From: Epithemia pelagica
Taxonomy: Eukaryota; Protista; Bacillariophyta
Reading direction: 5' to 3'
Assembly (NCBI GenBank): GCA_946965045.2
Contig: OX337239.1
Location: 2,728,001-2,792,000, forward strand
Length of the DNA stretch: 64,000 nucleotides
The notes below the pieces were generated by a model. It was given only the letters and a program-made list of their open reading frames with translations, did not search any database and was not told where the DNA came from. This document shows positions 1-44,873 of the stretch, piece by piece (within the stretch, counting starts at the first letter, position 1; each line of letters starts with the position of its first letter). The position numbers and the translations under genes are program-made.

Positions 1-1241
1 GCCAAAAACGTGGAAATAAGAAATTCGACGCCCAGCTAGCAGAGAACATTTGGTGGATGCAGAGCTTGGATCTGCCTCGAGAGTTGGCTGGTATTCCAGA
101 GGATCGTATTGCACAACTCAAAGAGGGCAAGTCTCCATATGCTTTAGAACAACACCAGAGGACACAGACTGTCGACCGATCTGAGGAAGGCCCGCTTGGG
201 ATCAAAATGAACGGGACTTCCGTATATATCAATCTACACAAGTCGTATCAGTTGCTCTCGACTGATGAGGAACATACAGAAACAGATGGCACGTCAGACA
301 CAAACCATTTACCATTTCCTCTGGGCGTTATGGTAGAGGTTCCCGGTGGTAACAACCAAAGAAAACGACATCGAACAGCAGGTCCATCGACCCCATCAGT
401 TGGTGACGATAGCCTTGGACAACGTCGATACACTGAAGTAGTCCAGGTTATCGTGAAGTATAAATCAAAGACGAATCATGGTATGACATTACCTGGATTT
501 TGTCTCCACTTTTTCAAGATCCATCATCAACGTTTCTATATGCACATGCACAGTGACCAACAGGGCACTAACCAACTTAGAACAACAGAAAATCCATATG
601 TATTGTTGACTGGATGCACAGAAATAAAGATCAACGATCCACCCTTTGGGACTATCCGGACACATCCCAACTAACAAAGTGAAGGCCCATGGCGGGATTG
701 GGTCATGGCCAAGGTACCTCGTAATAAACGGAAACCTTTGGACGAGATTTACAATCTTCCTTTGGGAGACATGGATACCCTACTGTGTCAGACTATATGC
801 TTTCTTTGTATTCCCTTCGCACAACAGACAGGAGATACATATCAACCAGAGAGTACCGATCATACAGCAACTCATGTTCTGCTTCGAACAACATATGTTC
901 AGTCCCAAACAGACCTGAAAAAAGCTTCTGTTCTTTTCAACAGATGGAGAAAACGTTTCGACATGGAGAGAATAGCCGAAGTCGTTATGGTTCCAGTCCA
1001 GAATATCATACGACTAGTTGGTGTTGTCGACGAGAACCCAGAAATGATTGAAGAACGAGATGCAGTCCCTCAATTTCTTCATTCTTCAACAGAATGTGAG
1101 CTATTGCAAGAAGATAACCGTAATTGAGAGAATTTCTCAGATATTGTTTGGGCTGTTCGTGATATAAAAGAATGGGCAGTGGAATTCAATAAATCTGCTA
1201 CTCCAAAATTGAAAGACAGGTATAAGGATCAACAGTCCTGA
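1..1241 (+). pseudogene. C-terminal part of a Plavaka-like (CMC-superfamily) transposase, starting before the window, with in-frame stops at 672-674 and 1125-1127
   Basis: ORFs 57..674 and 705..1127 are in the same frame, which stays open to TGA at 1239-1241. Read-through gives TEIKINDPPFGTIRTHPN*QSEGPWRDWVMAK ... VVMVPVQNIIRLVGVVDENP ... IVWAVRDIKEWAVEF. This matches my recollection of the R-x-HPNY-xxx-GPW-x-DW motif and C-terminal W-xx-F of Plavaka-type transposases. Not database-verified. Confidence 0.6.
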
Positions 1242-1419
1242 GGGATCACGTGAAGATCTCGATTGGTAGAGGGACGCGTTGGTCCATGCTCGCCCCACTT
1301 GTAACGCCAGACGACCTTTTCATGTTGTATTTATCTCTTGTCACTCATTTTTTCTAAAGAAGTAGAATCTTTCACACTCCGATTAACTCGATACTCGAAA
1401 CAAGTCATATATTCTGCTC

Positions 1420-2688
1420 TTGTTGAATATCATGGTTGTAAATCCGTACATCTCCCAAAAGAAGTCTAAGCCAATTGGTAGTAGCAAGGCCGGAAACGAA
1501 AGTCAAGTTCTTCTCATTGATAGTACAAACCAGAAATCAAAAGAGAACAGCAAACGGCCTCTATGTGAACACCACCCGATAAATCCATATACAGCCAAGA
1601 AAGTAAAAGACGAACCGTCACACGATCCCTCCAAGTCCAAACCAGACGATGCCACTGCTAACAACACAAATTCTGGTCTCTCAACATTTGTTCAAATGAT
1701 CGAAAACCAAGAAGAAGCAACCACAAGTACACACAAACTGCCGTCACCATTCCAAACTGCTTTAACAGCAACTAAGGAAACCGTAGGTGTGAACATAAAA
1801 CCGATGAATACGACAGAGAAAGCTGAGGAGTCCAAGAGGTCTAGCATCACCAACCCATACAACAAGAAGATAACAAACCCATACAAAACGAATCCGAAAA
1901 TAAACACCAATCATGGAAAGAAAATCCCAGTACTATGTGATTCACCACCGATGTACAAGCCTCGACCAAATCGCGAGAAACTCCACCCTGAGGTTGTTCA
2001 ATTCACCGAGCTTGTGAACCAAATCTATGGGTCCAACGATGTAAAGCCCGAACCCATGTGTCCCTGGTGTTTTGTAACAGATAATCTGTCCACCGACAGG
2101 TACTTGACCGGTAAATGTTGGCATCGTTTTGGAAAAACACATTCATGTGCGGAAAATTGTTATGGCTGTGGTGTACCAATGAACGGATGCGATTCAGGTG
2201 GTAACGAGCGATGTTGTACTGACGCCTTGTATATTCATGATTCTATGAATATAACACGTGAAGAATCAGACATCAACAAGGTTGCACTTGTGTGTAAATG
2301 CTGTCTTCGCCCGTGTAACTCTTATTCTGAATGTGTGTATTCACATGGATGTTGGAACTCTCCGAACAAACATTTCGTATGGAGATTTTGTCATATTGTT
2401 GGGCGTGCTTTGGTATACTCTGAACTAAAACCGAACTGTAAAGGACCAGGGAGTATCCCGAAACACGCACAGGATATAATCAAAACTGCCACAGAGTTGG
2501 TGTACAATGAACTCCGAGATCCTTATGAGTCATTGCAATACAACTCACCATTTTGTCATGTTATGGACCAAGATTCATGGTCAAAGTGGTTGGTTACAAT
2601 GTCTTTCGGGAACTTCCACAACTATATGTCATTCTTCCGACACTGCTACAATGCTCTGATGTCATCGAAGTACTCCCGACAAACCTAG
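1420..2688 (+). CDS. Cys/His-rich protein of 422 aa, probably zinc-binding, with a low-complexity N-terminus
   Basis: Uninterrupted ORF containing CPWC...CWH...HSC...CYGCG...C and further CKCC/C/C clusters. Confidence 0.65.
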   Translation: MLNIMVVNPYISQKKSKPIGSSKAGNESQVLLIDSTNQKSKENSKRPLCEHHPINPYTAKKVKDEPSHDPSKSKPDDATANNTNSGLSTFVQMIENQEEATTSTHKLPSPFQTALTATKETVGVNIKPMNTTEKAEESKRSSITNPYNKKITNPYKTNPKINTNHGKKIPVLCDSPPMYKPRPNREKLHPEVVQFTELVNQIYGSNDVKPEPMCPWCFVTDNLSTDRYLTGKCWHRFGKTHSCAENCYGCGVPMNGCDSGGNERCCTDALYIHDSMNITREESDINKVALVCKCCLRPCNSYSECVYSHGCWNSPNKHFVWRFCHIVGRALVYSELKPNCKGPGSIPKHAQDIIKTATELVYNELRDPYESLQYNSPFCHVMDQDSWSKWLVTMSFGNFHNYMSFFRHCYNALMSSKYSRQT

Positions 2689-2927
2689 GTAAATAACACA
2701 ATAGGAACAGTTAATCGCATCACAGTCGCCATCATACCAGTAGCTTCATCGTATCGCATCACAGCCGCCTTTTTCTGTCACATGTAAAATTTCATAGGAA
2801 GAGTTCAGCAGCGACAGACAGACATAAACAGAGAACGAGAATACACAAACGCCGACAGGAAGCCAAGCAACGATCTCCAAAGCAGGGATCTGACGACGAC
2901 TATGATTTGGACAACAAAGATGGGTAA

Positions 2928-3341
2928 AGTGAAGCAAAGGGACATTCTGGTTTCAAAGAGGACTCAGGTAGTACCAGCTCCGGTAGCAAGGAAGAGTCGA
3001 ACAGTGATGATAGCGAACAAACTCCTGTACCCGCTGTGGTTTCGCTAAAACTTCCTCCACAACAGTCAGGTACTGGGGATGATGAAGAATCTACAGATCA
3101 TGGTTCATCTGCTACCACCCTTCTCAAAAGAAACTTGCCCCGGAAGGCAAGAAAGGAACCCACCGTCAAATCCGTATCGAATGTGACATTTTCCAAGAAA
3201 CGTCTACCTCGCCGGAAACAACCGGCACGAAAAACGTTGGGAAACTGGGAACCAGATCCCAATTATGATATGACGAAGAAATATCCATATTTACGTCGGA
3301 AAACACCCGCAAGGAAAACAGTGCGCGGGGGTTCTCTTTGA
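2928..3341 (+). CDS. Basic low-complexity protein fragment with repeated R-K-x-P-A-R-K-T motifs
   Basis: The frame is open from 2928 to TGA at 3339-3341 and contains RRKQPARKT and RRKTPARKT. There is no clear ATG. Confidence 0.35.
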   Translation, partial: SEAKGHSGFKEDSGSTSSGSKEESNSDDSEQTPVPAVVSLKLPPQQSGTGDDEESTDHGSSATTLLKRNLPRKARKEPTVKSVSNVTFSKKRLPRRKQPARKTLGNWEPDPNYDMTKKYPYLRRKTPARKTVRGGSL

Positions 3342-4103
3342 GCACTCACAAAATGGTCGCTGATGAATTCATCTCCTTAGTGAAAAGTATTTCTGATCAG
3401 ACTCGAGACAGTAAATCACCCTCACCAATTTGTCCTTCCTGTCTTGTTTTCGGAAGAGACCCTTACCACATCTTCGGGAGTGATGGACACCTGTGTAGTA
3501 TCTGCTGCCACGGATGTGGTATAAACCATTATCGATGTGAACACCTCGGGAATGATTACAAATGCCGCTCGTCTTCTGCCCATGGTGGTTCAGAAACTCC
3601 CAATATTGCCAGAAAAGTAGCTGCAAACAACTCTCAAGGACCAGGAATTCATATCAAAGAACCAGCACGAACAAATATCTCTTTGAGCACTCACAAAATG
3701 GTCGCTGATGAATTCATCTCCTTTGTGGAAAGTATCCTGGTATAGAAACGAGCGGCATTTGTAATCATTCCCGAGGTGTTCACATCGATAATGGTTTATA
3801 CCATATCCGTGGCAGCAGATACTACACAGGTGTCCATCACTCCCGAAGATGTGGTAAGGGTCTCTTCCGAAAACAAGACAGGAAGGACAAATTGGTGAGG
3901 GTGGTTTACTGTCTCGAGTCCGATCAGAAATACTTTTCACTAAGGAGATGAATTCATCAGCGACCATTTTGTGAGTGCTCAAAGAGATATTTGTTCCATC
4001 ATCTTCTGCCCATGGTGGTTCGGAAACTCCCAATATTGCCAGAAAAGTAGCTGCAAACAACTCTCAAGGACCAGGAATTCATATCAAAGAACTAGCACGA
4101 ACA
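3333..4103. repeat. Complex direct-plus-inverted duplication: A, B, start of A, inverted A, B
   Basis: A at 3333-3571 recurs reverse-complemented at 3748-3996. B at 3571-3675 recurs at about 4001-4103. The start of A recurs at about 3679-3735. Confidence 0.95.
3338..3745 (+). pseudogene. Short Cys-rich ORF, paralogous to the zinc-binding domain of ORF 1420..2688 and rearranged by local duplication
   Basis: PSPICPSCLV...HIFGSDGHLCSICCHGCGINHYRC aligns by eye to PEPMCPWCFV...HRFGKTHSCAENCYGCGVPMNGC. Confidence 0.55.
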
Positions 4104-4455
4104 CGATTCTGGAGAAGAAACATGGCTGAAGTGGTTATTCTCTTGTCCACCGAACGGAGGATTTTACAATTACATGTTCATCTTCAACGTGTGTTACAAG
4201 GCATGCATGTCCGAGGTGGTCGACAAATAGTGGTCGAAGACCTGCCCAAAAGGATGATTTCTTCGGACAAACAAGGAAGAACAATTCAAATCTATATATC
4301 GTCGTAAAAACCCATTCCTTTAAGTTCCAGTAAAACCACAAAACCTCCTTCTCTTAAGTCCGTGCAGTAATTATCTTTCTTGCCAGTTGCATTCACATTC
4401 GAATTCTTTACTCTTGATTAGGAGACTCATGCTTAGGAGCTTCTTGTTATTCTAC

Positions 4456-4694
4456 TGAATAAATAATCACGGGCGCCCCTTTGTAACCTACGAAGGGCCT
4501 CGCTATGCCTCGCTACGCATCGCCTGGTATCGCCCGGCCCATAGTTGCGTGTTCGCTAGTGGGTACCGTGGTCGCTGTTTGGCCCCTACGTGAGCGATTT
4601 GCCCCCAAAGGGCACCCCTAGTTTAGTTACCATAATTTCTGATAGTTTGATTGTTGCAAGCCGTATATTGCGTCTGGCCGTCAGTTTTTATTCA
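4456..4694 (+). repeat. 5' LTR of the CoDi element (239 bp)
   Basis: Direct repeat of 10197-10436, with 4 substitutions and 1 indel by eye. Ends are TG...CA. Confidence 0.95.
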
Positions 4695-4711
4695 GTTTAT
4701 CAGACCCACTG
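4695..4711 (+). promoter_or_regulatory. Primer-binding site GTTTATCAGACCCACTG
   Basis: It abuts the LTR-terminal CA. An identical 17-mer abuts the unrelated LTR of the second CoDi (reverse complement at 57647-57663). Confidence 0.8.
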
Positions 4712-5189
4712 TCTGTTGTTTCCCCACTGTTCGCCGGACAGCAAGCGCCTGATCAACGCTCGGGAGTTGTTCGCGCTAAGCAGCTTCGTCACTCGCTCGC
4801 CTGCGTCATCTCTGTGACTTGTTTTTGTCACTGTGGGACCCACTCGCTAATTTGTGACTTGCGACTGCACAACGTACCGTGCACGTGCTCGTACACTTGG
4901 ACCGTCCATCCACGCGCGCCGTACGACTCAATCATTAAGCCTGCTGGCTTTCGACACGTGCCTGCTTGCTCGCGGAATCGCCGGTTCGCCGACTCGCGGA
5001 TTCGCCGATCGCCAACTCGCTCGCTCGCGGAATCGCCGGACGACTACTCGCCGATTCACTCGCAGATTGTTGGCTCACAGAAATTCGCTCTTCCCATCAC
5101 AATTGCAAATTTCTGCACAAGAACAAGCCTTCCCTTGCCATCCGTTTGACCTTCTGCTACCCTCCTACCCTTCATCCGACCCTTGAACC

Positions 5190-6448
5190 ATGGCCGCAAA
5201 GGCCTTCCGTACTGCACTGGGCCGCTGTGGCTACGACAATGACACCGTTGAGCACCTAACGCAACAGGGCTTCACAACAACGGATCAGTTCCTGGAGTTT
5301 CCCATCAACGAAGTCAAGCCCATGCTGAAGACATTAGCCAAGAACCTACCCGACGGTGTGACTCTACCCTACCAGTTCAACCTGAAGTTCCTTGGCTTCC
5401 GAATGTGGTTGGAGTACCGTTCTGTCCGTGGTCAGGACCTTGATGCTGGTGCTTATACTGGTGACGTAATCACCAAGTGGATGAAACGCGTAACGGAACT
5501 CCTGAATGCCACCACCACTGATGGTCAGGATGACCCAGTACCACCCAAAAGGCTAACGAACCTCGCCGATTGGGAACGTCACGACGGAATGTGGCGCACG
5601 TACTTGGGTCAGCACCGCGATCCGACAACGGGAGTGTCACCTACGTATTGCGTGAGGAGTCCGACGTACCGGACGACGCACTAACCGCCGATTACGACTG
5701 TATTGACGACGACCTAGTCGCGACCACTCGTCATGAGGGGGATCAGTACAAAGCCGACCGACGCAGAGTGTCTGAGCTGTACTACCCTCTTATCTACGAT
5801 GGCCCGGCATGGACGTTTGCTAAAACGCATGCGAAATCAAAGGACGGCCGTGAGGCCTACCTAACCGTCAAGCGGCAAGCCACTGGACAGGCCGCGAGCA
5901 TCCTGCGCAAGAAACAAGCTTATGCGCAGATCGCAAATGCTAAGTTTACAGGACGAGGGAAGTACCGCTTCCATGACTACATCCACCGTCACCAACATGC
6001 GCACAACACCCTGGAAGAGCTTGGCGAAACGGTTGCGGAAACGAAAAAGGTGACCAATTTCATGAATGGGATCACCGATCCGACGCTCGTCCAAGCCAAG
6101 ACCGTCGTTAACGGTGACCAGGAGAAGTTGGAGAACTTCGAAGCGTGCCAGCAAAACTTCTTGACTGTGCACAGTGCCGCCAAAACCGAAACGCAGGACG
6201 ACTCTCGCAAGATCGCCGCTGCTGGTACCACCCCAAGCAAAGGAAAGGGAAAAGGGCGCAATCAGAAAAAGAGCAAGAAGAAGAAGGACCGCGTTCATGC
6301 TGGTCACTACAATGCCAACGAATGGGCAGACCTGACAGAGGACGAACGCAAACAAGTCCTGGCTCTTCGCAAAGAGCGCAAAGAAAAGCGGAAGCTTGGA
6401 TCCGTCACCACCGACGACTCTTCCAACGCATCGTCTAACTGCCGATAG
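5190..6448 (+). pseudogene. gag: Copia gag with a frameshift at about 5650-5684
   Basis: ORFs 5190..5684 and 5570..6448 give a CoDi-type gag (YLGQHR...PLxYVLRE, AYAQIANAKFTGRGKYRFHDY, YNANEWADLTEDERKQV). Confidence 0.85.
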
Positions 6449-9400: not shown

Positions 9401-10075
9401 CGTTTTATGGCGAATCCACGAGAAGGACATCTCGAGCAAACGTTGCACATCTTCGCGTATCTGAAGAAGTACAATAAATCCGCCATTGTGTTCGACGACA
9501 CAGCCCCTGACTTTGATGAGTCACGTTTTACCCGGCCGGATTGGTCTGAGTATTATCCTGATGCTGCCGAGGCGATTCCGCCAAACGCACCAGCACCGCG
9601 TGGTAACGCTGTCACCACGACTTGCTTTGTCGATGCTGATCATGCTGGATGTCGTGTCACACGGCGCTCTCAAACAGGAGTCCTACTGTTCTTGCAAAGA
9701 GCACCGATCATGTGGTATTCAAAACGACAAAACACTGTTGAGACGTCTACATTTGGCAGTGAGTTCGTGGCGGTGAAAACTGCCATTGAAATGATTGAAG
9801 CATTTCGTTATAAGTTGCGAATGATGGGTATCCCGTTGGATGGAGAGACGAATGTGTTTTGTGACAGTGAATCTGTGTTTAAGAACTTGACGCAGCCGGA
9901 ATCAGTCCTAAAGAAGAAGCACAACGCAATTGCTTATCATCGGACTCGTGAAGCGCAAGCTGCTGGACTTGTGCGCATTGCATGGGAAGAAGGTAAAACG
10001 AATCTTGCCGATATCCTAACCAAACTGCTACCCGGGCCTCGATTGCGATTCCTGGCCCAACGTATCATGTGGTAG
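6396..10075 (+). pseudogene. pol: Copia pol (pre-integrase, integrase, RT, RNase H) with a frameshift at about 7150-7196 and no protease motif
   Basis: Motifs LSQRWGIG, FSDEMF, VSDGARE, PYSPWQNAAE, KARLVAGGH, DVQNAYL, VYIDDLL, FVDADHAG, FCDSES and NLADILTK are present in order. Confidence 0.95.
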
Positions 10076-10196
10076 CACCCCTTTTAAATCCAAAATGGGA
10101 TCGCCCCTTTTGAAGAATAGTCCGACGTACTGGACCGGCCTCTGCTGACATGACGAACTAAACGAAGTTGCCCACCCCGATTTTGTTCGCGGGGAC

Positions 10197-10436
10197 TGAA
10201 TAAATAATCACGGGCGCCCCCTTTGTAACCTACGAAGGGCCTCGCTATGCCTCGCTACGCATCGCCTGGTATCGCCCGGCCCCTAGTTGCGTGTTCGCTA
10301 GTGGGTACCGTGGTCGCTGTTTGGCCCCTACGTGAGCGATTTGCCCCCAAAGGGCACCCCTAGTTTAGTCATCATAATTTCTGATAGTTTGATTGTTGCA
10401 AGCCGTATACTGCGTCTGGCCGTCAGTTTTTATTCA
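10197..10436 (+). repeat. 3' LTR of the CoDi element (240 bp)
   Basis: Near-identical to 4456-4694 and preceded by GGGGAC. Confidence 0.95.
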
Positions 10437-10915
10437 CTACGGTGGTCCTCTAGTGATTCTCCGGCGGATCCACATCAATGGTACTGACGGACTCTTGCTT
10501 ATGAGACTCTTGTTTAGGAGCTTCTTGCTAGTCTGTGTCGTGCTTCTTATTTGGCAGTCCATACCTAACACCCAACAGGTCTATTGCCTTGTCCACATCC
10601 TCCATTGAAATTTTATCTGAAAGCCAATGAACGCTGCATGTATCATCATGCAGTGCTCATGGGTTTTGCCTCAAATTATCTAAGTCCAATCGAGGAAGTG
10701 TACAAGGTAATAGGATCTGAAGGGGTTGCAGAGGTGTACTTTGGAGACCCTTGCCATACCGAGTGTGAATTCCTCATCTTTCAAGGATTAGGGTAGACAA
10801 CAAATCTACCAAACAATGGAGCTAGACACCATATTCTCTTCATAGCTTCAACGGCAATTCTCGGTGAAGCGTTCCAAGACTCAATAGAAGCGCTAGTGAC
10901 AGCGTTCACCGTGGC

Positions 10916-13841: not shown

Positions 13842-13893
13842 TGAACGTGTTGATGTATAGAATATACCTGCCAAAGGCATGATTAGAATGATA

Positions 13894-15730
13894 TCATGGA
13901 ACAGATGGTCCTTTTTTTTCACAATTCTCTTTTGACGTTTGGCTTTGAATGACCTTGTCGTCGAATACTGATTTCATGACACTCGGTCTCCCTCTCCGAA
14001 TGCGGTTACACCTTTCTAACGTACATTCAACAAGGAAGGCACACGGGGATGAATCGACCAGATTACTAGGATTGCGTTGCTTGACGGTGAGCGACCTGTC
14101 TCGAAAGGCACAATGACTGGCTGTGTCCTCTGTATTTTCTTCAACATTCTCCTTCATACTCTCATACACTCGACTCAGTTTTCCCATTACATTCGGAAGA
14201 TCGGCGGCCGACACTCCATCCCTTTCGAGTAAGTCGTTTAGACACAGTTTGAATACTATGCGGTCTTCATTACAGGCAAAACAACATGACAACAAGTTAC
14301 CGAGTAGATCCATCTGCTTCTCACGGTCAATTCGTGGAGAGAACAGACACATGGCTTGATGGTCATCTTCGTTTGGTTTCGAGTACTTCATAGGAAAACC
14401 ACTCGGGGTCTCTGCTTGTCTTTTTTGAAACTTCTTCAAAGTCTCTCTTGTCAAGGTTAGCTTGGATAAGCCTTTCTTTTCCACTTCTTTGTTTGTCGGT
14501 AGCGGTTTGGGATCCTTGTATTTTGTTACTTTGGTCGGTCTGTTGGTGGTTGCTTCAGAGTCGTCTTGTTCAGGTTCACTTCTGGCACTCTTTTTCCCGT
14601 GACCATCTGCTCCTATTTCCGGTATAGTACCTCCCGTCAATGCCTCTGTTGTTTGTGAATCATCACGATGTCCTTGCCTAGATGCAAGCTCACGATTAAC
14701 CGAAGGGTAACTGGCACGAGATGATGGGTCGTGATTTTTGTTCCATCTATTCGAACCGCTCCGTTCATGAGTATGCGAACTATGATCTTCCTACCCTGGC
14801 CTGTGTCCACCGGTAGACATGCGTTCTCTTTGATCACTATTTGCGGAATAACGACCGTCATTGCTACTTCTTCGGTTTATAGCGGGCGACTCTCTTCTCT
14901 CCCGGTAAGTCCACCGGTTCAGAGGAGGACTCCTATAAGTGGATGAAGGATGGTAGTCGTCAGTATGATTTGGTCTCCAATCATGATATGAAGATCGATT
15001 CATGTTGTGCGATCCATGGTTGTGACGTCTGTCACAGTCCAGAGAACTACCACTATTCTTCCACCGGTTGAAATTAGGACTTGCGCTTCCTGTTGTCATT
15101 GTCGGTTCACCTTGTGACGGACGACAGCCCCACCCATCCGATGTGCTTCCTGTTCTCATTGTCAGTTCACCTTGTGACGGACGACAGTTCCAACCGTCCG
15201 ATGGAACAGTAACACCCGGTACTGCTGTTGGGTTCTTCGCAAGTCCCCAAGTCTGTCCACTTTGTGATGGCCCTGACACTCCTCTCATTTGTTTTTTTCG
15301 CTACTCCCCAAGAATCTTGTTGTGAGTTCGGTTCTCTGGACATATTATTATTACTGCTCACAGATCCCCATGATGAAGACACTGATACACTTGGATTCAT
15401 AGCGGAAGTATTTTTGGTATTCCTTCCCCAAGTGGACGGACTGGCATAACGAGAATGAGATGCACTTGCTACTCCAGTGACCTCTCTCTTCCCACATGTC
15501 GACATTCCTGTCGAATTGGAAGAACAATTTTGCTCTCTAGATCCCGTCGCACGATTCTGTGTACTAATTGTTGGCGGTTCCTCTAAATTGATCACAACGT
15601 CAGTTGTCGGTGAAGGTGGCGGTTTATATTCTCGTTTGTGTGTCACGATACTGACGATACCATCTTCATTGATTCCATTCGATGCATCGAAATACTTGAA
15701 TGTCCGATTGTATCTCGACACTTGGGGCAT
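13894..15730 (-). pseudogene. Protein with a Ser/Gly/Asn-rich WG/GW-repeat region and a C-terminal helical Cys-containing domain, carrying one frameshift and one stop
   Basis: ORF 15167..15730 joins 14791..15288 through the T7 run at 15292-15298. TAG at 14791 is in frame with ORF 13894..14640 and the intervening 50 codons are open. Motifs: STWG, SSWG, DSWG, QTWG, DGWN, DGWG. Confidence 0.55.
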
Positions 15731-15846
15731 GTCTTGTTACTTTGTCCTTCCTCATTTAACCACTCTCCTATACACTGTCGACAGAAGCAATGATCACAGT
15801 CCTTGATCCGACAATCCACAAATCTGTAGCTTTTGGCTTCCCCCTT
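15640..15846 (-). pseudogene. Second RING finger (C3HC4 type) in a frame missed by the ORF track
   Basis: Minus-strand translation EAKSYRFVDCRIKDCDHCFCRQCIGEWLNEEGQSNKTCPKCRDTI. The first CxxC is degenerate or frameshifted. Confidence 0.7.
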
Positions 15847-16202
15847 TCAGATCCAATAGGATTTGATATCTTCTTACTAACCACAGAGGTCTTATCTCTA
15901 GAAGAACCGAAAAGATGCTCGTTACCGGTGATCTTCTTGTTGCACTTGGGGCAAGTCACGCTATGATGTCGAAACCAAATTCGAAGGCAACTTCCATGTA
16001 CCTTGTGTCCACACGGGTACAACAAACAAACCTTGTCATCATTTTTCGCTTTCAAGGGACGTTGACACAACACACAACACTGCTTCCATGTTGTGTCCTC
16101 GTCGAGAGTAGTTTGGATAACATTTTTCGTCTTGCGAAGAACCGCGAGCTGTTCAAGCGACTCTTTTGGGCAAAGCGAGTAGTTAGGTACGTAACGCAGC
16201 AC
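15768..16202 (-). CDS. RING-H2 finger segment, in frame with ORF 16236..17309 across one TGA
   Basis: CVLC-x16-CGHKVHGSC...CPKC. Read-through gives LSD*GCSDVFSNEADVLRYVP. Confidence 0.8.
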   Translation of the reverse strand: MLRYVPNYSLCPKESLEQLAVLRKTKNVIQTTLDEDTTWKQCCVLCQRPLKAKNDDKVCLLYPCGHKVHGSCLRIWFRHHSVTCPKCNKKITGNEHLFGSSRDKTSVVSKKISNPIGSERGKPKATDLWIVGSRTVIIASVDSV

Positions 16203-16235
16203 ATCTGCCTCGTTGCTGAAGACATCAGAACAACC

Positions 16236-17309
16236 TCAATCAGACAAGCCTCCTCTTAGACTTATCTCGTCGTTGTAAGCGTCCCAATTCTGTGAATCAC
16301 CGATTTCGTCGACACTCTTCCTCACTCTGGAACATAGCGTTAAGGGTCTAAAGGCATTGTCTTCCAGAGCCATTTCAATCCCCCTAGCGAACTCGCAGTT
16401 GTATCTGATTTGATTTGATTTCCAAGAGGTGGTTGGTCTCATTGTCGAATCTACTTCCCCATACTTGCGGTGTTTCCCATGTGGACGATCCAGCAGTAGA
16501 TCCCCAAGAAAGCGCACCACAATTGCTTGGGGCATCGGTTTTGGTCCTGATCCTGATGGCTTGGGCATCTGAACAGTCCGGTAGGTCCAGTCCTCCGCAT
16601 CAGTAATATCACCCTGGTCCTCCCAAGGTTTCAGAATTGCACTATTTCTGTCCTTATCGACGATACTCCATTTCTTCAGGATGTATTCACACGTTCCTTT
16701 CCAAAAGGTAGGGGAACGGTTGTCAACAGGCTCAAAGATTAGACAGATCATCTTCGAAAACTCACATACCAACAATGCCGGATCAGTTATGTCATGTAAG
16801 GAAGTTGTAGCAACGATCCCCAGTAAAGTTGTTACACCTTCAACCTTCCAAGACTCAATGGGTATGGGATTTAGCATATCATCAGACTCTAGAGCTGTTG
16901 TTGCCACCCTGTCAACATAGACGCGTTCACTGTGATAGCGATGCACCATAAGTTTAATGCAAGTATCGAATGATGTTGCATCAAGTCCGAGTCGTCCTTT
17001 ATTGAAAATCAGATCGCGACGACGATTGCGATGGGGGATATGTAACACATGGGATGCCGATAGGATATCGTCGTTGATCAATCCACTGAATTTCTTGCAC
17101 TTCTTACAACAAAAGACCACTTGGATATCAACTTCGGTATTTGGAATCTCTAGACCTGAAGCATAGTTAGTCGCCAATTTCATTGAGGTTTGGAGTTGCT
17201 CTTGTAGCATTTCCGAATCATCTTTCGCAAATTTAACAAGATAGTTGTCGCCAATGTTGTCTAACGGTTCATCGGATTGTAATGAATCAGTCGACCGAAC
17301 GTGTGACAA
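16236..17309 (-). CDS. Unknown domain, possibly a catalytically degenerate Ulp1/C48-like fold, belonging to a family repeated at about 32 kb and 44 kb
   Basis: The 357-aa ORF is homologous by eye to the degraded ORFs 32211..32453, 43903..44199 and 44242..44493 (C[IL]KLM[VI]H..H..VYVD[RK]V; KFA..LAT.YA.GL). The Ulp1 likeness is a weak pattern match only. Confidence 0.5.
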   Translation of the reverse strand: MSHVRSTDSLQSDEPLDNIGDNYLVKFAKDDSEMLQEQLQTSMKLATNYASGLEIPNTEVDIQVVFCCKKCKKFSGLINDDILSASHVLHIPHRNRRRDLIFNKGRLGLDATSFDTCIKLMVHRYHSERVYVDRVATTALESDDMLNPIPIESWKVEGVTTLLGIVATTSLHDITDPALLVCEFSKMICLIFEPVDNRSPTFWKGTCEYILKKWSIVDKDRNSAILKPWEDQGDITDAEDWTYRTVQMPKPSGSGPKPMPQAIVVRFLGDLLLDRPHGKHRKYGEVDSTMRPTTSWKSNQIRYNCEFARGIEMALEDNAFRPLTLCSRVRKSVDEIGDSQNWDAYNDEISLRGGLSD

Positions 17310-17330
17310 GGGATCTTGTACTTGGGGAAC

Positions 17331-18611
17331 TTATATGAATGAAACTGATGGTGATGGAATTGGAGTCTGTTGTCCACCTTCTATCGGAATCACTTTGACA
17401 GGAGGTGGTGGTGCCGATTTACGCTTCAGTGCTATTCTGTTGAAGGTTTCATGTCGGGTACCAGTTGCCAATGTCGTAGGTTTGTCACTATCTGTCACGC
17501 TTAAAGTCGGTTGGGAAGGGAGTACCGGCCTCTTGGAATCCTTGCGTGAATCGCGTTCACTCTCCACAGTCTTCGTTCTGCTTTTCCGTGTCGAAGGTGT
17601 TACATGGTCCGTAACCGAAGCATGGCGTCTACTGGCTGCAACCTCTTTTGATTTCCTGGAGGATAAGGATTCCTGTTTCTCATAGAATGACGCTACGATA
17701 TAAAACATCCCATTGGTATTCGTCGTAGAGGCCTTGTTTTTCATCCTTTCTTGAAGCGAATCACGTTCATCAATATATTGATTGAACCAAGTATCTGGCG
17801 TGGTATAAAGCAGCGCCTGTTCCATTTCAATATCAGTGAGAAATGGCTTTCCGTCATCTGCCTGGAGTATGGAATAGATCTGTTTCATATGCTCCAGGGC
17901 CCAGGTAACCTTCGAGGTTGGAACGGATCGAGGTTTTCGGTACTGAGAGACATCTCCAATCAGGTACTTCTTGAGTGAAAGAGCAACACGACCAAGTCCA
18001 CTTTCATCCCCAGCAAATATCCCATGATGACTGAGGAAATGTCGGAAAACATCCATCAGGCTAGTATAATCGACATATTGAGATGAGGAATCAGGGAAGG
18101 CTTTTCTCCAAATAGAAGCAGAAGATCCATATAAGGTTTTGCGGAAAAGAGATATCGTAGTATTCAATGTAACACTGTTATCCTCTTCCATTTCTGAAAT
18201 AAGTCGTTTGAGACAGTATGCCGTGTGACAGCACAAATCTACCAAGGCAGTAGCATCACAAATTGGTAGATAGACATGGACTTGGTTGGTACCCTGCGAC
18301 ATAGAGACTGTCGAAAATTTTCCTGTTTCAGGACCACATACACACTCATACCAATACAACATATTCTCGAAATTGATCGGAGACTCGAGGCAATCAGCAT
18401 CTACTGTTCCCGGATGTACACTCGGACGAGTAGTAACCGGTGTAGTCGTATCTGCCAGTTGTCCCGATCGACTGCCGCATTGTCCCTCAGATCTCGTTTG
18501 TTCCCTCGAAATACTTTGTTCCGAAGCTCTGGCGTGAGTATCCCGATGCGGAGAAGGGGGGTTCTTGTACCGTGGTCCTTTCACAGCTTTTCTCCTTCCT
18601 GCCATGATCAC
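17331..18611 (-). CDS. Retrotransposon gag-like protein segment with no pol, in frame with ORF 16236..17309 across one TAA
   Basis: LFRKTLYGSSASIW ... YRKPRSV ... LTDIEMEQALLYTTPDTW resembles Ty3/gypsy-type gag from memory. Read-through gives SFI*VPQVQDPLSHVRS. Confidence 0.5.
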   Translation of the reverse strand: MIMAGRRKAVKGPRYKNPPSPHRDTHARASEQSISREQTRSEGQCGSRSGQLADTTTPVTTRPSVHPGTVDADCLESPINFENMLYWYECVCGPETGKFSTVSMSQGTNQVHVYLPICDATALVDLCCHTAYCLKRLISEMEEDNSVTLNTTISLFRKTLYGSSASIWRKAFPDSSSQYVDYTSLMDVFRHFLSHHGIFAGDESGLGRVALSLKKYLIGDVSQYRKPRSVPTSKVTWALEHMKQIYSILQADDGKPFLTDIEMEQALLYTTPDTWFNQYIDERDSLQERMKNKASTTNTNGMFYIVASFYEKQESLSSRKSKEVAASRRHASVTDHVTPSTRKSRTKTVESERDSRKDSKRPVLPSQPTLSVTDSDKPTTLATGTRHETFNRIALKRKSAPPPPVKVIPIEGGQQTPIPSPSVSFI

Positions 18612-18714
18612 AGAGAAAGATTTTAGATGGAGAATGTCCCAAGATCCGATGTAGGGGCCTTTTGTTCGTAAGGCTTATCTTCAACGGACCAAGTCTCAAA
18701 ATCCGATGTCGGCA

Positions 18715-20225
18715 GGACTAGGGAGAGAGGTCCAGGAACTTCCTTGACGAAGCACTCTTGTTGTAGCGTATCCTCGCAGTAGTCTTCTAGATGGAACTTC
18801 CTTAAAAAAGCCCCTTTGCTGTAGCGTCTTCTTCCAATGACCAGGTAAGGAAGAATGAGAAGCCCGATTAGCCTCTTCCTATCAACACGACAAAGTCCAA
18901 TGTCGGCCTTTTGTTGGTAGTGTCTTCTGTGGAGTACACAGGACTAGGGAGAGAGGAGGTCCAGGAACTTAGCGCTTTTGTTGTAGCGTATCCTCGTAGA
19001 AGTCTTCTAGATGGAACTTCCTCAAAGAAGCGCTTTTGTTGTAGCGTCTTCTCCCAACGACCGCGCAACGAAGAATAAGAAGCCCGATTAGCTTCTTCCT
19101 CTTAACACCACAAATTAGGAAGAGCGAGCTACTTGAGCAGCTCTAGGAAGCGCTTTTGTTGTAGCGTCTTCCACGAACAATCGCCGTCTTCTTAGTGGAG
19201 AAGGAGTGTGGAAGAATCTGAAGCACTTTAGTTATAGTTTCGACAGATTCACTTCGATCTCTCAACAACACCAAGTAGAAAACAAGGGCGAGGAACTCTA
19301 CCCTTCAAGCTGCTCCACCCCCAGAGGAAGCGCTTTTGTTATAGCGTCTTCCAGTGGACAACCACAGTCTCGTATCAAGTAGAGAGGTAACAGGATAGCA
19401 GAAGCACTTTTATTGTAGTGTTGACCGGATTCCTTCCCTCGTATCCACCCAACGTGGAACAGTGATCTATCCCTGAGGAGGGTGCTCGTCGTCTTCCCTC
19501 TTCGACCCTTGGGAAAAATCAGGACAGAGGAACCGGTTAGTACCGTGTTCACTCAGCTTGCTTTGACCTGTCCTGATTTTCACAAGAGTCTTAGAGGTAG
19601 TATCTGGACTTGACGAGTACTTGCAAAAAGACTTGAGGGGCCAAAAGTCGCTTTGATTGTAGCGATAACTTTCATCGTGCCCCCAAGTTGTTTCTTGTAC
19701 ACTGGACCGTTGCTTGTTTTCGAATGATGTCGGAAGGCGGTCGATCGGAATGAACAATGGGCGATTCAACAATCAAATATTGTCTTCTTCCTTTCTTCTG
19801 ACGATTGAGATTTGTAGGGAAACAAGGAGAAGAGAAGGAGAATCAAGAAGCGGACCAAGTCGAAGTCGCTTTGATTGTAGCGGTTACTTTCGTGGTTTCG
19901 ACTTGCTTGCGATCAGAAAGAACCAGAGGATGATTCAACAATCAAAATAGAGTCTTCTTCCTTGCTTCTGGTGGTTGCGATTTTCAGGGAAAGGAGGTGG
20001 AAAAGGAGGGAGAATCGAATGAGAGCTCTGTCAGAATTCTGCACCAGTGGTAACGTTTGTGTCCTCTCTTGCTTGTTTTGATGATCGATCAAACAAAAGG
20101 ATGATTCAACAATCAAAGAGATACTTCTTCTATGCTTCTGGCAGTTGAGGTTTTCAGGGAAAGGGGAAGAAGAAGAGACAACAAAAACCAACCGATTCGA
20201 AAGTCGCTTTGATTGTAGCGATTAC
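18715..20225. repeat. Diverged tandem or dispersed repeat array with core AAG(C/TC)GCTTT(T)G(T/A)TTGTAGCG
   Basis: About 9 copies of the core motif (e.g. near 18745, 18807, 18970, 19027, 19148, 19327, 19645, 19862, 20201), a roughly 225-bp duplication (18715-18900 and 18941-19115), and three GATTCAACAATCAAA modules. Confidence 0.85.
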
Positions 20226-20227
20226 TT

Positions 20228-20259
<32 letters not shown>

Positions 20260-20264
20260 GGTGG

Positions 20265-20323
<59 letters not shown>

Positions 20324-21427
20324 TTGGTGTTGGTGTTGGTGTTGGTGTTGTTGGTGTTGTTGGTGTTGTTGGTGTTGTTGGTGTTGTTGGTGTTGTTGGT
20401 GTTGGTGGTGTTGTTGGTGTTGGTGGTGGTGGTGGTGGTGGTGGTGGTGGTGGTGGTGGTGGTGGTGTTGGTGTTGGTGTTGGTGTTGGTGGTGGTGGTG
20501 GTGGTGGTGTTGGTGGTGTTGGTGGTGTTGGTGGTGTTGGTGGTGTTGGTGGTGTTGGTGTTGGTGTTGGTGTTGGTGTTGGTGTTGGTGTTGGTGTTGG
20601 TGTTGCTCTTGTGTTTTTTGTTGTGTTTTGAGCAGAAGCGAAAAAAGAGAGTTGGGTACAACTGTCCGAGACGTGACGTCGTTTCCTGTGTACGCGCCAA
20701 TCACTTCACCATCTTTGATTGTCCGAACTGCAAAAACGCCAAACTCGGCGCCTGGGAGTTTTGACTCCTTCACCTCAAACAGAAGCACTTTTCCAAGGTA
20801 GATCTTGACTACCGGCTTGTTCGCAAATGTGTAACCGACTTGCTTGCCGATTGGGAAGGTATGTTTTCTGTTCTTCTTGACAGGGAGACCCATTCCACCC
20901 GAAAGTGGCACAATCTTCCCCTTTTGCAAGCCTGAACCGGGCTTCCGAATTGGAGCTTCTTGGACCGAAAAAGTGGCTGAAATCTTCCGTGAGACATACT
21001 CTCCCATAGCACAGGCAAGTACAGCACTGTCTTTGATCTTGGAGAGCGTCTTGAGGCCTTCGGTGAAAGTCCTGATTGGATCCCGTCCAGAACAAGAAGG
21101 GAGTTTCTCCACTTCCTCGACGCCTTTCTTGTAGTCCGCTGTGCGCGTCTCGGTGAGAAGCTGCCGCATTTTAGTGTCCGAATACTGTTTGCTGTGGTCC
21201 TTCTCTGGATGGCCACGCCAAACATCTGCAATCTTTTTATCCTTCACTTCGGCAAAGTCTTGATCCGAAAGAAACCGATGGTGCTTTGTTGTTGTCGCTT
21301 CGTCTGTTGCTGCTGCTTCGGGTGCTGCGGCTGCTGCTGCTTCGGGCGCCGCTGCTGCTTTGGCTGACTGCTCTTCCGCTGCATCTATTGCAAGTATAAG
21401 AGCTTCAAGATTTCCTTTGTCACTCAT
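20222..21427 (-). CDS. Protein with the N-terminal half of a SET domain, running into a poly-Q/H microsatellite
   Basis: FEVKESKLPGAEFGVFAVRTIKDGEVIGAYTG matches SET motif I (GxGxFAxxxIxxGxxIxxYxG). No NHSCxPN or ELxYDY motif follows. Confidence 0.65.
20226..20606. repeat. Compound (GTT)n/(GGT)n/(GGTGTT)n microsatellite
   Basis: Directly visible. It encodes poly-Q/H in the frame of ORF 20222..21427. Confidence 0.98.
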
Positions 21428-21872
21428 GCTGTCTCGTTTTTGAGCGCCTGCTTTTAATACTATTTCTTAGGGCTTGGTTTCCCCATGGTCGAAACGCAAA
21501 AACTCGAAACACGAAACACGAAACACAAGAAACACGAAACGCAGTATTCTCCTCAGCCCTCAGCTCACATTCCAGAAAAAATCTTGAGCTCACATACTAA
21601 AAAACGGTGAAGTTTTGGTATGTGGGCTGAGTTACAAAAGGATTTGCGTGCCAGTTTTGCGATGCGTGCGCGTTTTCGGAGAGGGGGGCGTGTTTCGCGC
21701 GAGGTCTCACATTTTCGAGGTACTTACAAACTGATAATCCAACACGCAACCCGAGCACGCAACACGGAAGTGATCATTGATACCAATAACTGACAAGAAA
21801 TACATTCAATAAAATGGATTGCTGTTATAAATAGTTAAGTTACATGCATTTTGATGATAAATGGAGATTAGA

Positions 21873-32765: not shown

Positions 32766-32785
32766 AGTGTACAAGGTTTGGTGTG

Positions 32786-44765: not shown

Positions 44766-44873
44766 GTAAATCTACTTTAATAGCTGAGGGTGGAAGAGGA
44801 CGAGCTAGGGTGTGAGGAGTGGCTTAACTCCGAGAAGGGCAATAGCGATGAGGCGTGAACTGCCAAGCGGATC

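What the first reader, a model, noticed from the sequence alone, without database searches (positions are those of the whole stretch)
1..21800. Candidate giant Plavaka-like DNA transposon carrying a multi-arm anti-silencing toolkit
Seen in sequence: a transposase-like C-terminus and Cys-rich genes on the + strand converge on a co-oriented minus-strand block. That block encodes a half SET domain, a gag-like/unknown/RING/RING frame, a WG/GW-repeat protein and a TET/JBP-like dioxygenase, with no obvious introns. Most of these frames carry only a few stops or frameshifts, as expected if they decayed together. Established: in basidiomycete fungi, TET/JBP genes travel with KDZ and Plavaka transposons, and Ulp1-type cargo is common in large DNA transposons. 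Inference: this is one element of at least 15 kb (excluding the nested copia) whose cargo could act on DNA methylation, histone methylation, ubiquitin/SUMO and Argonaute pathways. I know of no such combination described from a diatom, but I cannot search the literature.
Basis: partly seen in the sequence, partly recalled or inferred. Interest (0 to 1): 0.92.

Follow-up and report, generated by a model that had tools for sequence, protein, structure and literature searches.

The report
Dead giant Plavaka-type transposon with cargo
The region is a decayed copy of an 18-kb "cut-and-paste" jumping gene that carries, besides its transposase, a TET-like DNA-demethylase gene and a large RING/GW-repeat gene, a cargo set that may help it escape host silencing; related giant elements are already known from red algae and fungi.

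Summary
The observation largely holds. Window 1-1127 is the C-terminal third of a roughly 1,200-codon DDE transposase pseudogene. I recovered its start 2.4 kb left of the window in a near-identical copy of the locus (L006).

- **Transposase:** its family matches Plavaka-type transposases by profile comparison (99.9 %, E 1.5e-32).
- **Dioxygenase:** the minus-strand block encodes a dioxygenase whose intact relative folds like TET2, CMD1 and CcTet (Foldseek E 3e-9 to 3e-6).
- **Upstream gene:** one large broken gene lies upstream, with two RING fingers and a GW/WG array.
- **Transposon proof:** other copies in the same assembly have 5'-CATCTAAGG inverted termini, 2-bp target duplications and an empty site. 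One complete 18.5-kb copy keeps the same gene order as the window.
- **Wider linkage:** the dioxygenase faces a Plavaka-type transposase gene in eight independent metagenome contigs.

Not supported:
- the "gag-like" label;
- the half-SET fragment as cargo (it is absent from the complete copy);
- a right end at 21.5-21.8 kb (no terminus found);
- the diatom origin (untestable here).

Giant Plavaka elements with SET and 2OG-oxygenase cargo are already described in red algae, so this is a new variant. Any anti-silencing function is inference. The RING-plus-GW gene is the new part.

The parts
1..1127 (+). C-terminal third of the DDE transposase pseudogene. There is an in-frame TAA at 672-674 and the frame ends in TGA at 1125-1127. 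The gene starts about 2,385 bp left of the window (L006 7559).
   Evidence: L006 extends the same frame, 7499-11182, with 7 internal stops and no frameshift. It is collinear with P0014. hhalign against Plavaka-type proteins gives 99.9 %.
1387..2685 (+). Cys/His-rich accessory ORF 1, downstream of the transposase on the same strand. Function unknown.
   Evidence: It is conserved at the same position in three other copies: 79 % identity in L014, 39 % in L011 and 39 % in M1279. No Pfam or PDB hit.
3269..4304 (+). Second, shorter Cys-rich ORF (3269-3742) with a 240-nt inverted duplication (3333-3572 / 3748-3987). The tail ORF 3975-4304 is also conserved in L011.
4454..10437 (+). Nested Ty1/copia LTR retrotransposon. 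LTRs at 4454-4695 and 10195-10437; RVT_2 in 7199-10075.
   Evidence: It is a later insertion into the element.
10919..12640 (-). Tandem-repeat ('PPKDSEQAT'-type) C-terminal extension of the dioxygenase frame, with an in-frame TAG at 11873-11875.
   Evidence: Repeat families D3-D8. Translations.
12640..14640 (-). TET/JBP-like dioxygenase pseudogene in three frames: 13897-14640, 13086-13802 and 12640-13162. The catalytic-motif region is about 12650-13030.
   Evidence: Homologues P0001-P0007 and P0021-P0033. The AF2 model of P0001 has pLDDT 81.7, and Foldseek's top 21 hits are all TET/JBP structures.
14794..15736 (-). GW/WG-repeat (Ago-hook-like), low-complexity C-terminal region of the large upstream gene. 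It is split over two frames (15170-15736, 14794-15300).
   Evidence: The diverged copy L013 12248-14788 has 14 GW/WG at the same position.
15646..16235 (-). Two RING fingers. RING 1 is at about 15939-16079 in frame 15771-16235. The RING 2 remnant is in frame 15646-15846.
   Evidence: Pfam zf-RING_2, 30.9 bits.. The L013 homologue has three RING-like fingers.
16239..17330 (-). Conserved middle domain of the large gene, possibly an Ulp1/CE-clan-like fold (weak lead). It is in frame with the RING ORF across a TGA at 16236-16238.
   Evidence: P0084 is 43 % identical. The AF2 model is low-confidence (pLDDT 46), yet every top Foldseek hit is a CE-clan protein, best E 3e-3. Degraded paralogues lie at 43794-44505 and 32214-32930.
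17334..18674 (-). It is in frame with the next piece across a TAA at 17331-17333. Function unknown.
   Evidence: Homologous pieces lie at the same position in L014 (39 %) and M1279 (29 %). No Pfam or PDB hit.
18751..20700 (.). Direct repeats (18751-19114, 19756-20173), possibly subterminal, then a 550-bp trinucleotide microsatellite (about 20150-20700). The element probably breaks off here.
   Evidence: L014 has a similar microsatellite about 600 bp inside its right terminus. No terminus motif was found.
20225..21466 (-). N-terminal fragment of a SET-like gene that runs into the microsatellite. It is NOT shown to belong to the element.
   Evidence: It is absent from the complete copy M1279 and from L014.

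Best explanation
The finding is a dead, partly truncated copy of a giant cut-and-paste DNA transposon of the Plavaka type, related to CACTA/EnSpm.

**Family structure (shown).** The family has 5'-CATCTAAGG...CCTTAGATG-3' inverted termini and makes 2-bp target-site duplications. A full copy is about 18.5 kb. Reading left to right, it carries:
1. small ORFs of unknown function, on the minus strand;
2. a DDE transposase of roughly 1,200-1,300 aa, on the plus strand;
3. a Cys-rich protein, on the plus strand;
4. a TET/JBP-like Fe(II)/2-oxoglutarate dioxygenase, convergent on the minus strand;
5. upstream of the dioxygenase, one very large protein with an unknown N-terminal part, a possibly Ulp1-like domain, 2-3 RING fingers and a GW/WG-repeat tail.

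**This copy (shown).** Its left terminus lies 5,180 bp left of window position 1. It runs at least to 18674. It carries a later copia insertion, nonsense mutations and frameshifts in every gene, and has lost its right terminus.

**Function (inferred).**
- The transposase excises and reinserts the whole unit.
- The dioxygenase would oxidise 5-methylcytosine on the element's DNA to counter methylation-based silencing, as proposed for fungal TET-bearing transposons.
- The RING/GW protein would bind Argonaute through its GW hooks and ubiquitinate it or its partners.
For: **Transposase**
- L006 supplies the missing N-terminus in one frame.
- The frame is collinear with P0014.
- P0014 matches the PF18759-positive protein of L004 at E 1e-15.
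- The profile-profile comparison gives 99.9 %, E 1.5e-32 over 578 columns.

**Transposon structure**
- In L014 the element (6521-20480) interrupts a copia. Its two flanks are contiguous, with a 2-bp overlap, in the uninterrupted copia of L006. This gives an empty site and the target duplication CT.
- M1279 element 4333-22809 has target duplication TC. The 2,145-bp derivative L007 1485-3629 has TG and a 13-nt perfect inverted terminus.
- The same 9-mer occurs at L006 4764, exactly where a flanking copia fragment stops.

**Same gene order**
- Seven collinear blocks are shared between the window copy and M1279, and six with L014.

**Dioxygenase**
- Foldseek top hits are TET2 3e-9, CMD1 4e-7, CcTet 2.5e-6 and NgTet1 3e-4.
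- The H-x-D and distal H/R motifs are kept in the window copy.
- A convergent Plavaka-type transposase neighbour is present in L004, L005, L009, L010, L019, L021, L023 and L024.

**RING and GW**
-.

**Decay**
- The in-frame stops align to ordinary residues in the L014 homologue.
Against: - The right terminus of the window copy was not found, and no target duplication could be checked for it.
- The window family's transposase itself does not reach the Pfam Plavaka threshold. The best hit is 14.2 bits, for the L012 piece.
- The dioxygenase has no Pfam Tet_JBP hit.
- The fold evidence comes from an intact relative that is 39-44 % identical, not from the broken window copy.
- The RING/GW, Cys-rich and left ORFs were found only in this one assembly.
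- No expression, methylation or binding data exist, so every functional statement is inference.
- One copy (L014) lacks the dioxygenase and yet has the most intact transposase (one in-frame stop). The cargo may therefore not be needed for transposition.
Confidence: 0.85

Rival explanations
1. The element really extends to about 21.5-21.8 kb and the SET-like gene is part of its cargo. On this view the other copies have simply lost it.
For: - The SET-like fragment is co-oriented with the minus-strand block and lies just beyond the microsatellite.
- L014 has a similar microsatellite about 600 bp inside its right terminus, which would place a terminus near 21.3 kb.
- A SET-like paralogue lies about 7 kb from a transposase fragment in L007.
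- Red-algal giant Plavaka elements carry a SET gene.
Against: - There is no CATCTAAGG-type terminus, even allowing one mismatch, between 18.7 and 33 kb.
- The complete, terminus-bounded copy M1279 and the copy L014 have no SET homologue.
- In L007 the SET-like gene lies outside the only terminus-bounded unit there and has the opposite relative orientation.
Confidence: 0.12
2. The genes are neighbours only by accident, in a transposon graveyard. On this view the transposase and the minus-strand block belong to different elements or are decayed host genes.
For: The window is packed with unrelated transposon remains: copia fragments, a piggyBac-like transposase at 37569-38417 and a pogo-like one at 41736-42401. 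No host gene is present, so chance adjacency is common here.
Against: - The same seven blocks occur in the same order and orientation in a copy so diverged that only protein similarity remains. That copy is bounded by one pair of inverted termini with a 2-bp duplication.
- The dioxygenase-transposase pair recurs in eight unrelated metagenome contigs.
Confidence: 0.03
3. The element is as described, but the cargo genes are neutral passengers or serve transposition itself (DNA binding, target choice, protein turnover) rather than counteracting host silencing.
For: - L014 has lost the dioxygenase and the GW tail but keeps the most intact transposase (one stop).
- The Cys-rich ORF is the best-conserved accessory gene (79 % identity between copies) and looks like a DNA-binding partner.
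- GW-rich low-complexity tails can arise without any Argonaute function.
Against: - The dioxygenase-transposase linkage persists over deep divergence (33-50 % identity) in many organisms, which argues for selection on the pair.
- The GW context is kept between copies whose proteins share under 40 % identity.
- TET-type genes have been captured by many transposon lineages in fungi (PMC12730594).
Confidence: 0.35

Closest known systems
Fungal TET/JBP-bearing Plavaka elements (PlavakaB; Iyer et al. 2014 as cited in, and Kojima 2025, PMC12730594)
   Same: - A DDE transposase related to CACTA/EnSpm.
- Termini beginning 5'-CATC (fungal CATCA..TGATG; here CATCTAAGG..CCTTAGATG).
- 2-bp target duplications.
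- A TET/JBP-type dioxygenase as accessory gene.
   Different: - The fungal elements carry only the dioxygenase as cargo.
- This family adds a Cys-rich gene, left-hand ORFs and a very large RING/GW gene, and reaches 18.5 kb.
- The dioxygenase and the transposase are too diverged to hit Pfam Tet_JBP or, for the window family, Plavaka.
- The host is not a fungus as far as the marine metagenome relatives suggest, but it is unidentified.
Giant Plavaka elements of red algae with accessory genes PAG1-4 (Bostrychia, Chondrus, Gracilaria; bioRxiv 10.1101/2025.02.11.637652, Supplemental Table 6)
   Same: - Size 10-22 kb, 2-bp target duplications and short inverted termini.
- Several accessory genes on both strands, including a 2OG-dependent oxygenase (PAG3) next to tandem repeats, and chromatin-type domains (SET, JmjC, Ulp1 in related elements).
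- Mostly degenerate copies.
   Different: - Terminal motifs differ (CGTCT/CACTG/CACAG against CATCT).
- No N6-methylase/SET gene is shown inside this family.
- A RING/GW gene is not reported there.
VANDAL (Mutator-like) elements of Arabidopsis with the anti-silencing protein VANC (as cited; otherwise from my own knowledge)
   Same: A DNA transposon that carries its own factor proposed or shown to remove DNA methylation from itself.
   Different: - A different transposase superfamily.
- VANC is not a dioxygenase.
- The function is demonstrated for VANC and not here.
Viral silencing suppressors with GW/WG Argonaute hooks (for example carmovirus P38, ipomovirus P1) and the F-box suppressor P0 of poleroviruses (my own knowledge; general background in the hits)
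   Same: A parasite-encoded protein that uses GW/WG motifs to engage Argonaute, or an E3-ligase adaptor that destroys it.
   Different: - Those are RNA-virus proteins.
- None combines RING fingers with a GW array.
- None is transposon-encoded.
- Binding is untested here.

Membership tests
Plavaka / CMC-type DDE transposons | The transposase is homologous to Plavaka transposases (Pfam PF18759). | tested here: met
   - P0014, the intact relative of the window's transposase, matches the PF18759-positive L004 protein (35.2 bits) at E 1e-15.
- The profile-profile comparison gives 99.9 %, E 1.5e-32.
- Plavaka is the only transposase family that appears in any Pfam scan.
Plavaka / CMC-type DDE transposons | The protein itself passes the Pfam PF18759 gathering score. 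| tested here: not met
   Window and L006 pieces, P0014, P0064 and the L014 transposase give no hit. The L012 piece scores 14.2 bits against a cut-off of 26.3.
Plavaka / CMC-type DDE transposons | [quoted passage not shown] | tested here: inconclusive
   - H(3)H is present (FHNLVHI in L006, FHNLAHI in P0014).
- The DKTH, GD..SQDNL and ES.HK catalytic blocks align.
- The Cys pair reads CC or CxC in this family rather than C(2)C.
Plavaka / CMC-type DDE transposons | 5'-CA..TG-3' termini (PlavakaB: CATCA..TGATG) with 2-3-bp target-site duplications. | tested here: met
   - CATCTAAGG..CCTTAGATG termini with 2-bp duplications occur in L014 (CT), M1279 (TC) and L007 (TG). L014 also has an empty site.
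- For the window copy, only the left terminus was found (L006 4764).
TET/JBP dioxygenases | A double-stranded beta-helix fold closest to solved TET/JBP structures. | tested here: met
   - The AF2 model of P0001 has pLDDT 81.7 and pTM 0.86.
- Foldseek ranks 1-21 are all TET2, CMD1 or CcTet. AlkB homologues come only from rank 22.
- The only PDB sequence hit of the window piece is CMD1, at E 0.66.
TET/JBP dioxygenases | An H-x-D ... H iron triad and a 2OG-binding Arg. | tested here: met
   - H458, Y459 and D460 are nearly invariant in 21 sequences.
- H507, R516, R519 and H520 are invariant in A6.
- All are present in window 12650-13030.
- Which His and Arg are the ligands was not checked on the model.
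TET/JBP dioxygenases | A match to Pfam Tet_JBP (PF12851). | tested here: not met
   No hit at E up to 10 for the window pieces or for 9 family members.
TET/JBP dioxygenases | Oxidation of 5-methylcytosine (or thymine) in DNA. | not testable with these tools
   This needs an enzyme assay on an intact family member.
RING-type E3 ligases | A C3HC4/RING-H2 zinc finger. | tested here: met
   zf-RING_2 scores 30.9 bits (cut-off 27.3) in window 15771-16235. zf-C3HC4 scores 29.5 bits in the L013 homologue. PDB RING hits.
GW/WG 'Ago-hook' proteins | Multiple Trp residues flanked by Gly or small residues, in a low-complexity region. | tested here: met
   7 GW/WG in window 14794-15736 (p = 7.5e-6 against background). 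14 in the L013 homologue, at the same position after the RINGs.
GW/WG 'Ago-hook' proteins | Binding to an Argonaute/Piwi PIWI domain. | not testable with these tools
   No host Argonaute sequence or binding data are available.
SET-domain methyltransferases | A SET domain (Pfam PF00856) with the GxG, NH and ELxxDY-type motifs. | tested here: inconclusive
   - The window fragment gives no hit.
- The paralogue in L007 shows GYGLFA, FINDP and GEELFLFY in the right order, but scores only 15.9 bits (cut-off 22.4) and is itself broken.
- The C-terminal half is absent from the window.
Ulp1/CE-clan cysteine proteases | The CE fold with a His-Asp-Cys triad. | tested here: inconclusive
   - The model of P0084 is low-confidence (pLDDT 46).
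- All top Foldseek hits are CE-clan proteins (SENP1/2/5, adenain, NEDP1, YopJ-type), but the best E is only 3e-3.
- No conserved His or Cys is evident at the expected places in alignment A3.
Red-algal Plavaka accessory-gene cassette (PAG1-3) | Homology of the cargo to PAG1, PAG2 or PAG3. | not testable with these tools
   Only names and architectures are available, not sequences.

The most novel reading that the evidence does not exclude
A DNA transposon encodes a two-pronged counter-defence. One prong is a TET-like enzyme that strips cytosine methylation from its own DNA. The other is a RING E3 ligase fused to an Argonaute-hook GW array (perhaps with a SUMO/ubiquitin-protease-like domain) that captures the host's small-RNA effector and marks it for destruction. 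That would be the first transposon-encoded, virus-like suppressor of RNA silencing of this design.
Probability: 0.25. Interest if true: 0.85.

Novelty: new variant of a known kind. Interest (0 to 1): 0.6.

Why it matters
Transposons that carry their own epigenetic enzymes show how genomic parasites fight back against host silencing. TET-bearing elements were known in fungi, and multi-gene giant Plavaka elements in red algae.

This family shows the same strategy in another, probably marine protist, genome. Its dioxygenase-transposase core also occurs widely in ocean and freshwater metagenomes.

It adds a cargo gene not reported before: RING fingers joined to GW/WG Argonaute hooks. If that protein really targets Argonaute, it would link transposon biology with the logic of viral silencing suppressors. 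It would also offer a compact tool for perturbing small-RNA pathways.

The work also gives exact termini, target duplications and an empty site, so the family can now be annotated genome-wide.

Tried and rejected
- **Pfam** on all large ORFs gave only RING and RVT_2. Sequence search of PDB gave nothing significant for the dioxygenase profile, the SET fragment, the Cys-rich ORF or the 'gag-like' ORF.
- **Direct comparison** of the window's transposase tail with the L004 Plavaka protein was at noise level. Homology appeared only through the intact intermediate P0014 and through profiles.
- **Alternative genetic code.** I considered this because there are many in-frame stops and no frameshift in the transposase. 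I rejected it because all three stop codons occur, and they align to Y, L, D, T, L, Q and Y in a homologue.
- **Long inverted repeats** sought by BLAST between the element flanks gave nothing. A 16-mer scan found the true termini only in L014.
- **Right terminus of the window copy.** I searched with the terminal 9-mer (one mismatch or fewer) and 20-mers (six mismatches or fewer), and looked for the continuation of the flanking copia. Nothing turned up.
- **Termini at 46178 and 62940** belong to other copies. Their flanks are TT, not AG, and there is a second CE-like remnant at 43.8-44.5 kb.
- **Metagenome scan.** The first scan, with the full-length alignment, found nothing. The catalytic-domain alignment worked.
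- **Organism identity** could not be obtained. There are no names in the protein clusters, no Rfam hit, no host gene in the window and no paper citing the assembly accession.
- **Structure of the middle domain** came out at low confidence, so I treat it only as a lead.

Full report
**What is in the window.** Stop-to-stop ORFs show a plus-strand frame running in from the left edge (3-671 and 675-1124, separated by one TAA). Two related Cys-rich plus-strand ORFs follow at 1387-2685 and 3269-3742. A copia retrotransposon spans 4454-10437. Its LTRs are 98 % identical, RVT_2 lies in 7199-10075, and CTAC flanks both sides. Then comes a co-oriented minus-strand block from 18674 down to 10919. Within that block, three pieces (17334-18674, 16239-17330, 15771-16235) share one frame and are separated only by single stops. 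The rest changes frame four times. Pfam recognises only a RING finger (30.9 bits, in 15771-16235) and the copia RT.

**Extending the locus to the left.** The 205-aa ORF at 57-671 is on record in ENA assembly ERZ21939226, contig ctg1312l (662 kb). This gave locus L006, which holds 9,944 bp of left flank plus a copy of window 1-10674 that is 98.8-99.6 % identical. In L006 the window's first frame continues upstream without any frameshift to an ATG at L006 7559. That makes about 1,208 codons with seven internal stop codons. The stops are TAA and TGA and align to Tyr, Leu, Asp, Thr, Leu, Gln and Tyr in a homologue. They are therefore ordinary nonsense mutations and not a variant genetic code.

**Is it a Plavaka-type transposase?**
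- A search of 1.84 billion representative proteins with window 675-1124 found only 13 relatives. One was the 1,050-aa protein P0014, which is collinear with all seven pieces of the L006 frame.
- P0014 matches the 904-aa protein of metagenome contig L004 at E 1e-15, with further collinear segments. That L004 protein passes Pfam Plavaka (35.2 bits).
- A profile of the window's family against a profile of three such proteins gives 99.9 % probability, E 1.5e-32, over 578 columns. The alignment spans the DKTH, GD..SQDNL and ES.HK catalytic blocks and the H(3)H motif.
- The window's own family never reaches the Pfam threshold. 'Plavaka-like, divergent' is the accurate label.

**The dioxygenase.**
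- Window 12620-13162 has homologues with no Pfam annotation (P0001-P0007, later P0021-P0033). They share the motifs NASHYDxxD, FVLPN and HGxxI(S/A)WDGRxIRH.
- The intact 551-aa relative P0001 also aligns with window pieces 13086-13802 and 13897-14640. The window gene is therefore a roughly 550-codon dioxygenase with two frameshifts, followed by a tandem-repeat tail down to 10919.
- An AlphaFold model of P0001 built with 21 sequences has mean pLDDT 81.7 and pTM 0.86.
- Foldseek against the PDB puts human TET2 (3e-9), Chlamydomonas CMD1 (4e-7) and Coprinopsis CcTet (2.5e-6) in ranks 1-21. NgTet1 scores 3e-4 and AlkB homologues begin only at 1e-4.
- The fold and the metal- and 2OG-binding motifs support 'TET/JBP-like'. 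Pfam Tet_JBP is not matched.

**Do the genes travel together?**
- *Across organisms.* In L004, L005, L009 and L010 the dioxygenase gene is convergent with a Plavaka-type transposase gene a few hundred bases away. A metagenome scan with the catalytic-domain alignment returned 57 loci. Four of the closer relatives reach past the dioxygenase into downstream sequence (L019, L021, L023, L024), and all four carry the convergent transposase. A more distant clade sits instead between a DEAD-box helicase gene and another large convergent gene.
- *Within the same assembly.* Contig ctg1279l (L012 and L013, merged as M1279) carries a copy so diverged that only protein similarity remains (27-65 %). It holds the same seven blocks in the same order and orientation: left ORFs (-), transposase (+), Cys-rich ORF (+), dioxygenase (-), RING/GW protein (-), middle domain (-) and N-terminal domain (-).
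- Contig ctg1332l (L014) has the same order but lacks the dioxygenase and the GW tail. Its transposase has a single in-frame stop.

**Termini, target duplication and empty site.**
- In L014 the element occupies 6521-20480 (13,960 bp) inside a copia. The two flanks (6200-6520 and 20481-21227) match L006 16192-16515 and 16514-17260. They are therefore contiguous in an uninterrupted copia, with a 2-bp overlap. This is an empty site with target duplication CT.
- The ends read CATCTAAGGAGGGAA and CATCTAAGGAAGGAA.
- The same motif bounds M1279 4333-22809 (18,477 bp, duplication TC) and a 2,145-bp deletion derivative at L007 1485-3629 (13-nt perfect inverted termini, duplication TG).
- These features agree with fungal PlavakaB (CATCA..TGATG, 2-3 bp duplications; PMC12730594) and with the 2-bp duplications of red-algal Plavaka.

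**Limits of the window copy.** The motif CATCTAAGGGCG occurs at L006 4764, window coordinate -5180. That is exactly where a flanking copia fragment stops, so this is the left terminus. No matching right terminus exists between 18.7 and 45.8 kb, and the rest of that copia is not in the window. The copy therefore runs from -5180 to at least 18674. That is 23.9 kb, or 17.9 kb without the nested copia, and its right end has been lost. The region 18751-20173 holds direct repeats and 20150-20700 a microsatellite. L014 has a similar microsatellite about 600 bp inside its right terminus.

**The large upstream gene.**
- Window 15771-16235 has a RING finger, and 15646-15846 (another frame) has a second RING remnant. 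In 14794-15736, 7 of 10 Trp are flanked by Gly, against 9.7 % in all window ORFs.
- The better-preserved homologue L013 12248-14788 (846 aa) has three RING-like fingers followed by six 'STNGWGARP' units, giving 14 GW/WG.
- The middle domain (16239-17330) has one relative of suitable length, P0084, plus degraded paralogues in the window.
- Its model is poor (pLDDT 46). Even so, all top Foldseek hits are CE-clan proteins (SENP1/2/5, adenain, NEDP1, YopJ-type), with best E 3e-3. No catalytic His or Cys is evident. I treat this only as a lead.
- The N-terminal piece (17334-18674) is conserved between copies but has no detectable relatives, so 'gag-like' is unsupported.

**The SET fragment.** Window 20225-21466 gives no hit on its own. 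It is 35 % identical to a broken gene in L007 that continues into FINDP and GEELFLFY motifs, with a sub-threshold Pfam SET hit. That continuation is missing from the window, where the frame runs into the microsatellite. The complete copy M1279 and L014 have no such gene. In L007 it lies outside the terminus-bounded unit. It is probably a SET-like pseudogene, but it is not shown to be cargo of this element.

**How it most likely works.**
- *Shown:* a DDE cut-and-paste transposon with defined ends, and the linkage of its cargo.
- *Inferred from the families involved:* the transposase moves the whole unit, and the TET-like enzyme oxidises 5mC on the element to relieve methylation-based silencing, as proposed for fungal TET-bearing transposons (PMC12730594).
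- *Inferred:* the RING/GW protein engages Argonaute through its GW hooks and acts as an E3 ligase. This is by analogy with viral GW-motif suppressors and E3-adaptor suppressors, from my own knowledge. I found no transposon example in the library.
- The window copy itself is inactive.

**Comparison and novelty.** TET-positive Plavaka elements are known in Agaricales. Giant (10-22 kb) Plavaka elements are described in red algae, with accessory genes that include a 2OG oxygenase beside tandem repeats, an N6-methylase/SET protein and, in related elements, JmjC and Ulp1. The present family is therefore a new variant of a known kind. It has a different terminal motif, a clearly TET-like fold and a RING/GW gene not reported there. 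No paper in the library links TET/JBP transposons with diatoms. The host could not be identified, so the 'diatom' statement stands untested.

Noticed in passing
window 62940-64000: The left terminus of another copy of the same transposon family lies here (exact CATCTAAGGAGGGAA at 62940, reading rightwards). It is 73 % identical to the left-ORF end of L014, has a left-ORF homologue at 63429-63704 (-), and runs off the right edge of the window.
   Followed up: partly
window 43173-46178 and 31883-32930: A fragmentary further copy ends at a right terminus at 46178 (CCCCCTTAGATG, flank TT). It has a remnant of the middle (CE-like) domain at 43794-44505 (-). A 92-95 % identical duplicate of part of it lies at 31883-32482. 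A 103-bp tandem array at 44769-45504 lies between the domain remnant and the terminus.
   Followed up: partly
window 25619-30479: A roughly 4.9-kb unit is bounded by 400-600-bp inverted repeats (25619-26258 and 30058-30479, about 70-75 % identical). Related sequence lies near, but outside, the complete element on ctg1279l. It is probably an unrelated transposon.
   Followed up: no
window 37569-38417 (-) and 41736-42401 (+): A piggyBac-like transposase fragment (DDE_Tnp_1_7, E 2.6e-26) and a pogo/Tigger-like DDE_1 fragment (E 1.6e-17). With the copia fragments at 46962-47375 and 53672-55114, the whole window is a transposon graveyard with no host gene and no Rfam match.
   Followed up: partly
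L006 16376-17800 against window 6435: The nested copia in the window lacks 1.4 kb that is present in the near-identical copy of the locus. The two versions differ by 1.2 % left of this point and by 0.4 % right of it. This suggests two haplotypes or strains.
   Followed up: no
L025, L028, L030, L032, L036 (metagenome contigs): A more distant clade of the same dioxygenase family (41-48 % identity in the catalytic part) has a different conserved architecture. A 1,200-1,450-aa DEAD/Helicase_C protein lies upstream and a 1,150-1,300-aa convergent protein lies downstream, the latter with a weak integrase zinc-binding hit. This recalls the helicase-encoding repeats that carry PAG genes in red algae.
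   Followed up: partly
L007 1485-3629: A 2,145-bp non-autonomous deletion derivative of the family, with 13-nt perfect inverted termini and a TG duplication. It shows the family has also produced short internally deleted copies.
   Followed up: partly
window 3333-3987: A 240-nt, 99 % identical inverted duplication inside the second Cys-rich ORF, also present in the L006 copy. It is recent relative to the rest of the element, and its origin is unexplained.
   Followed up: no
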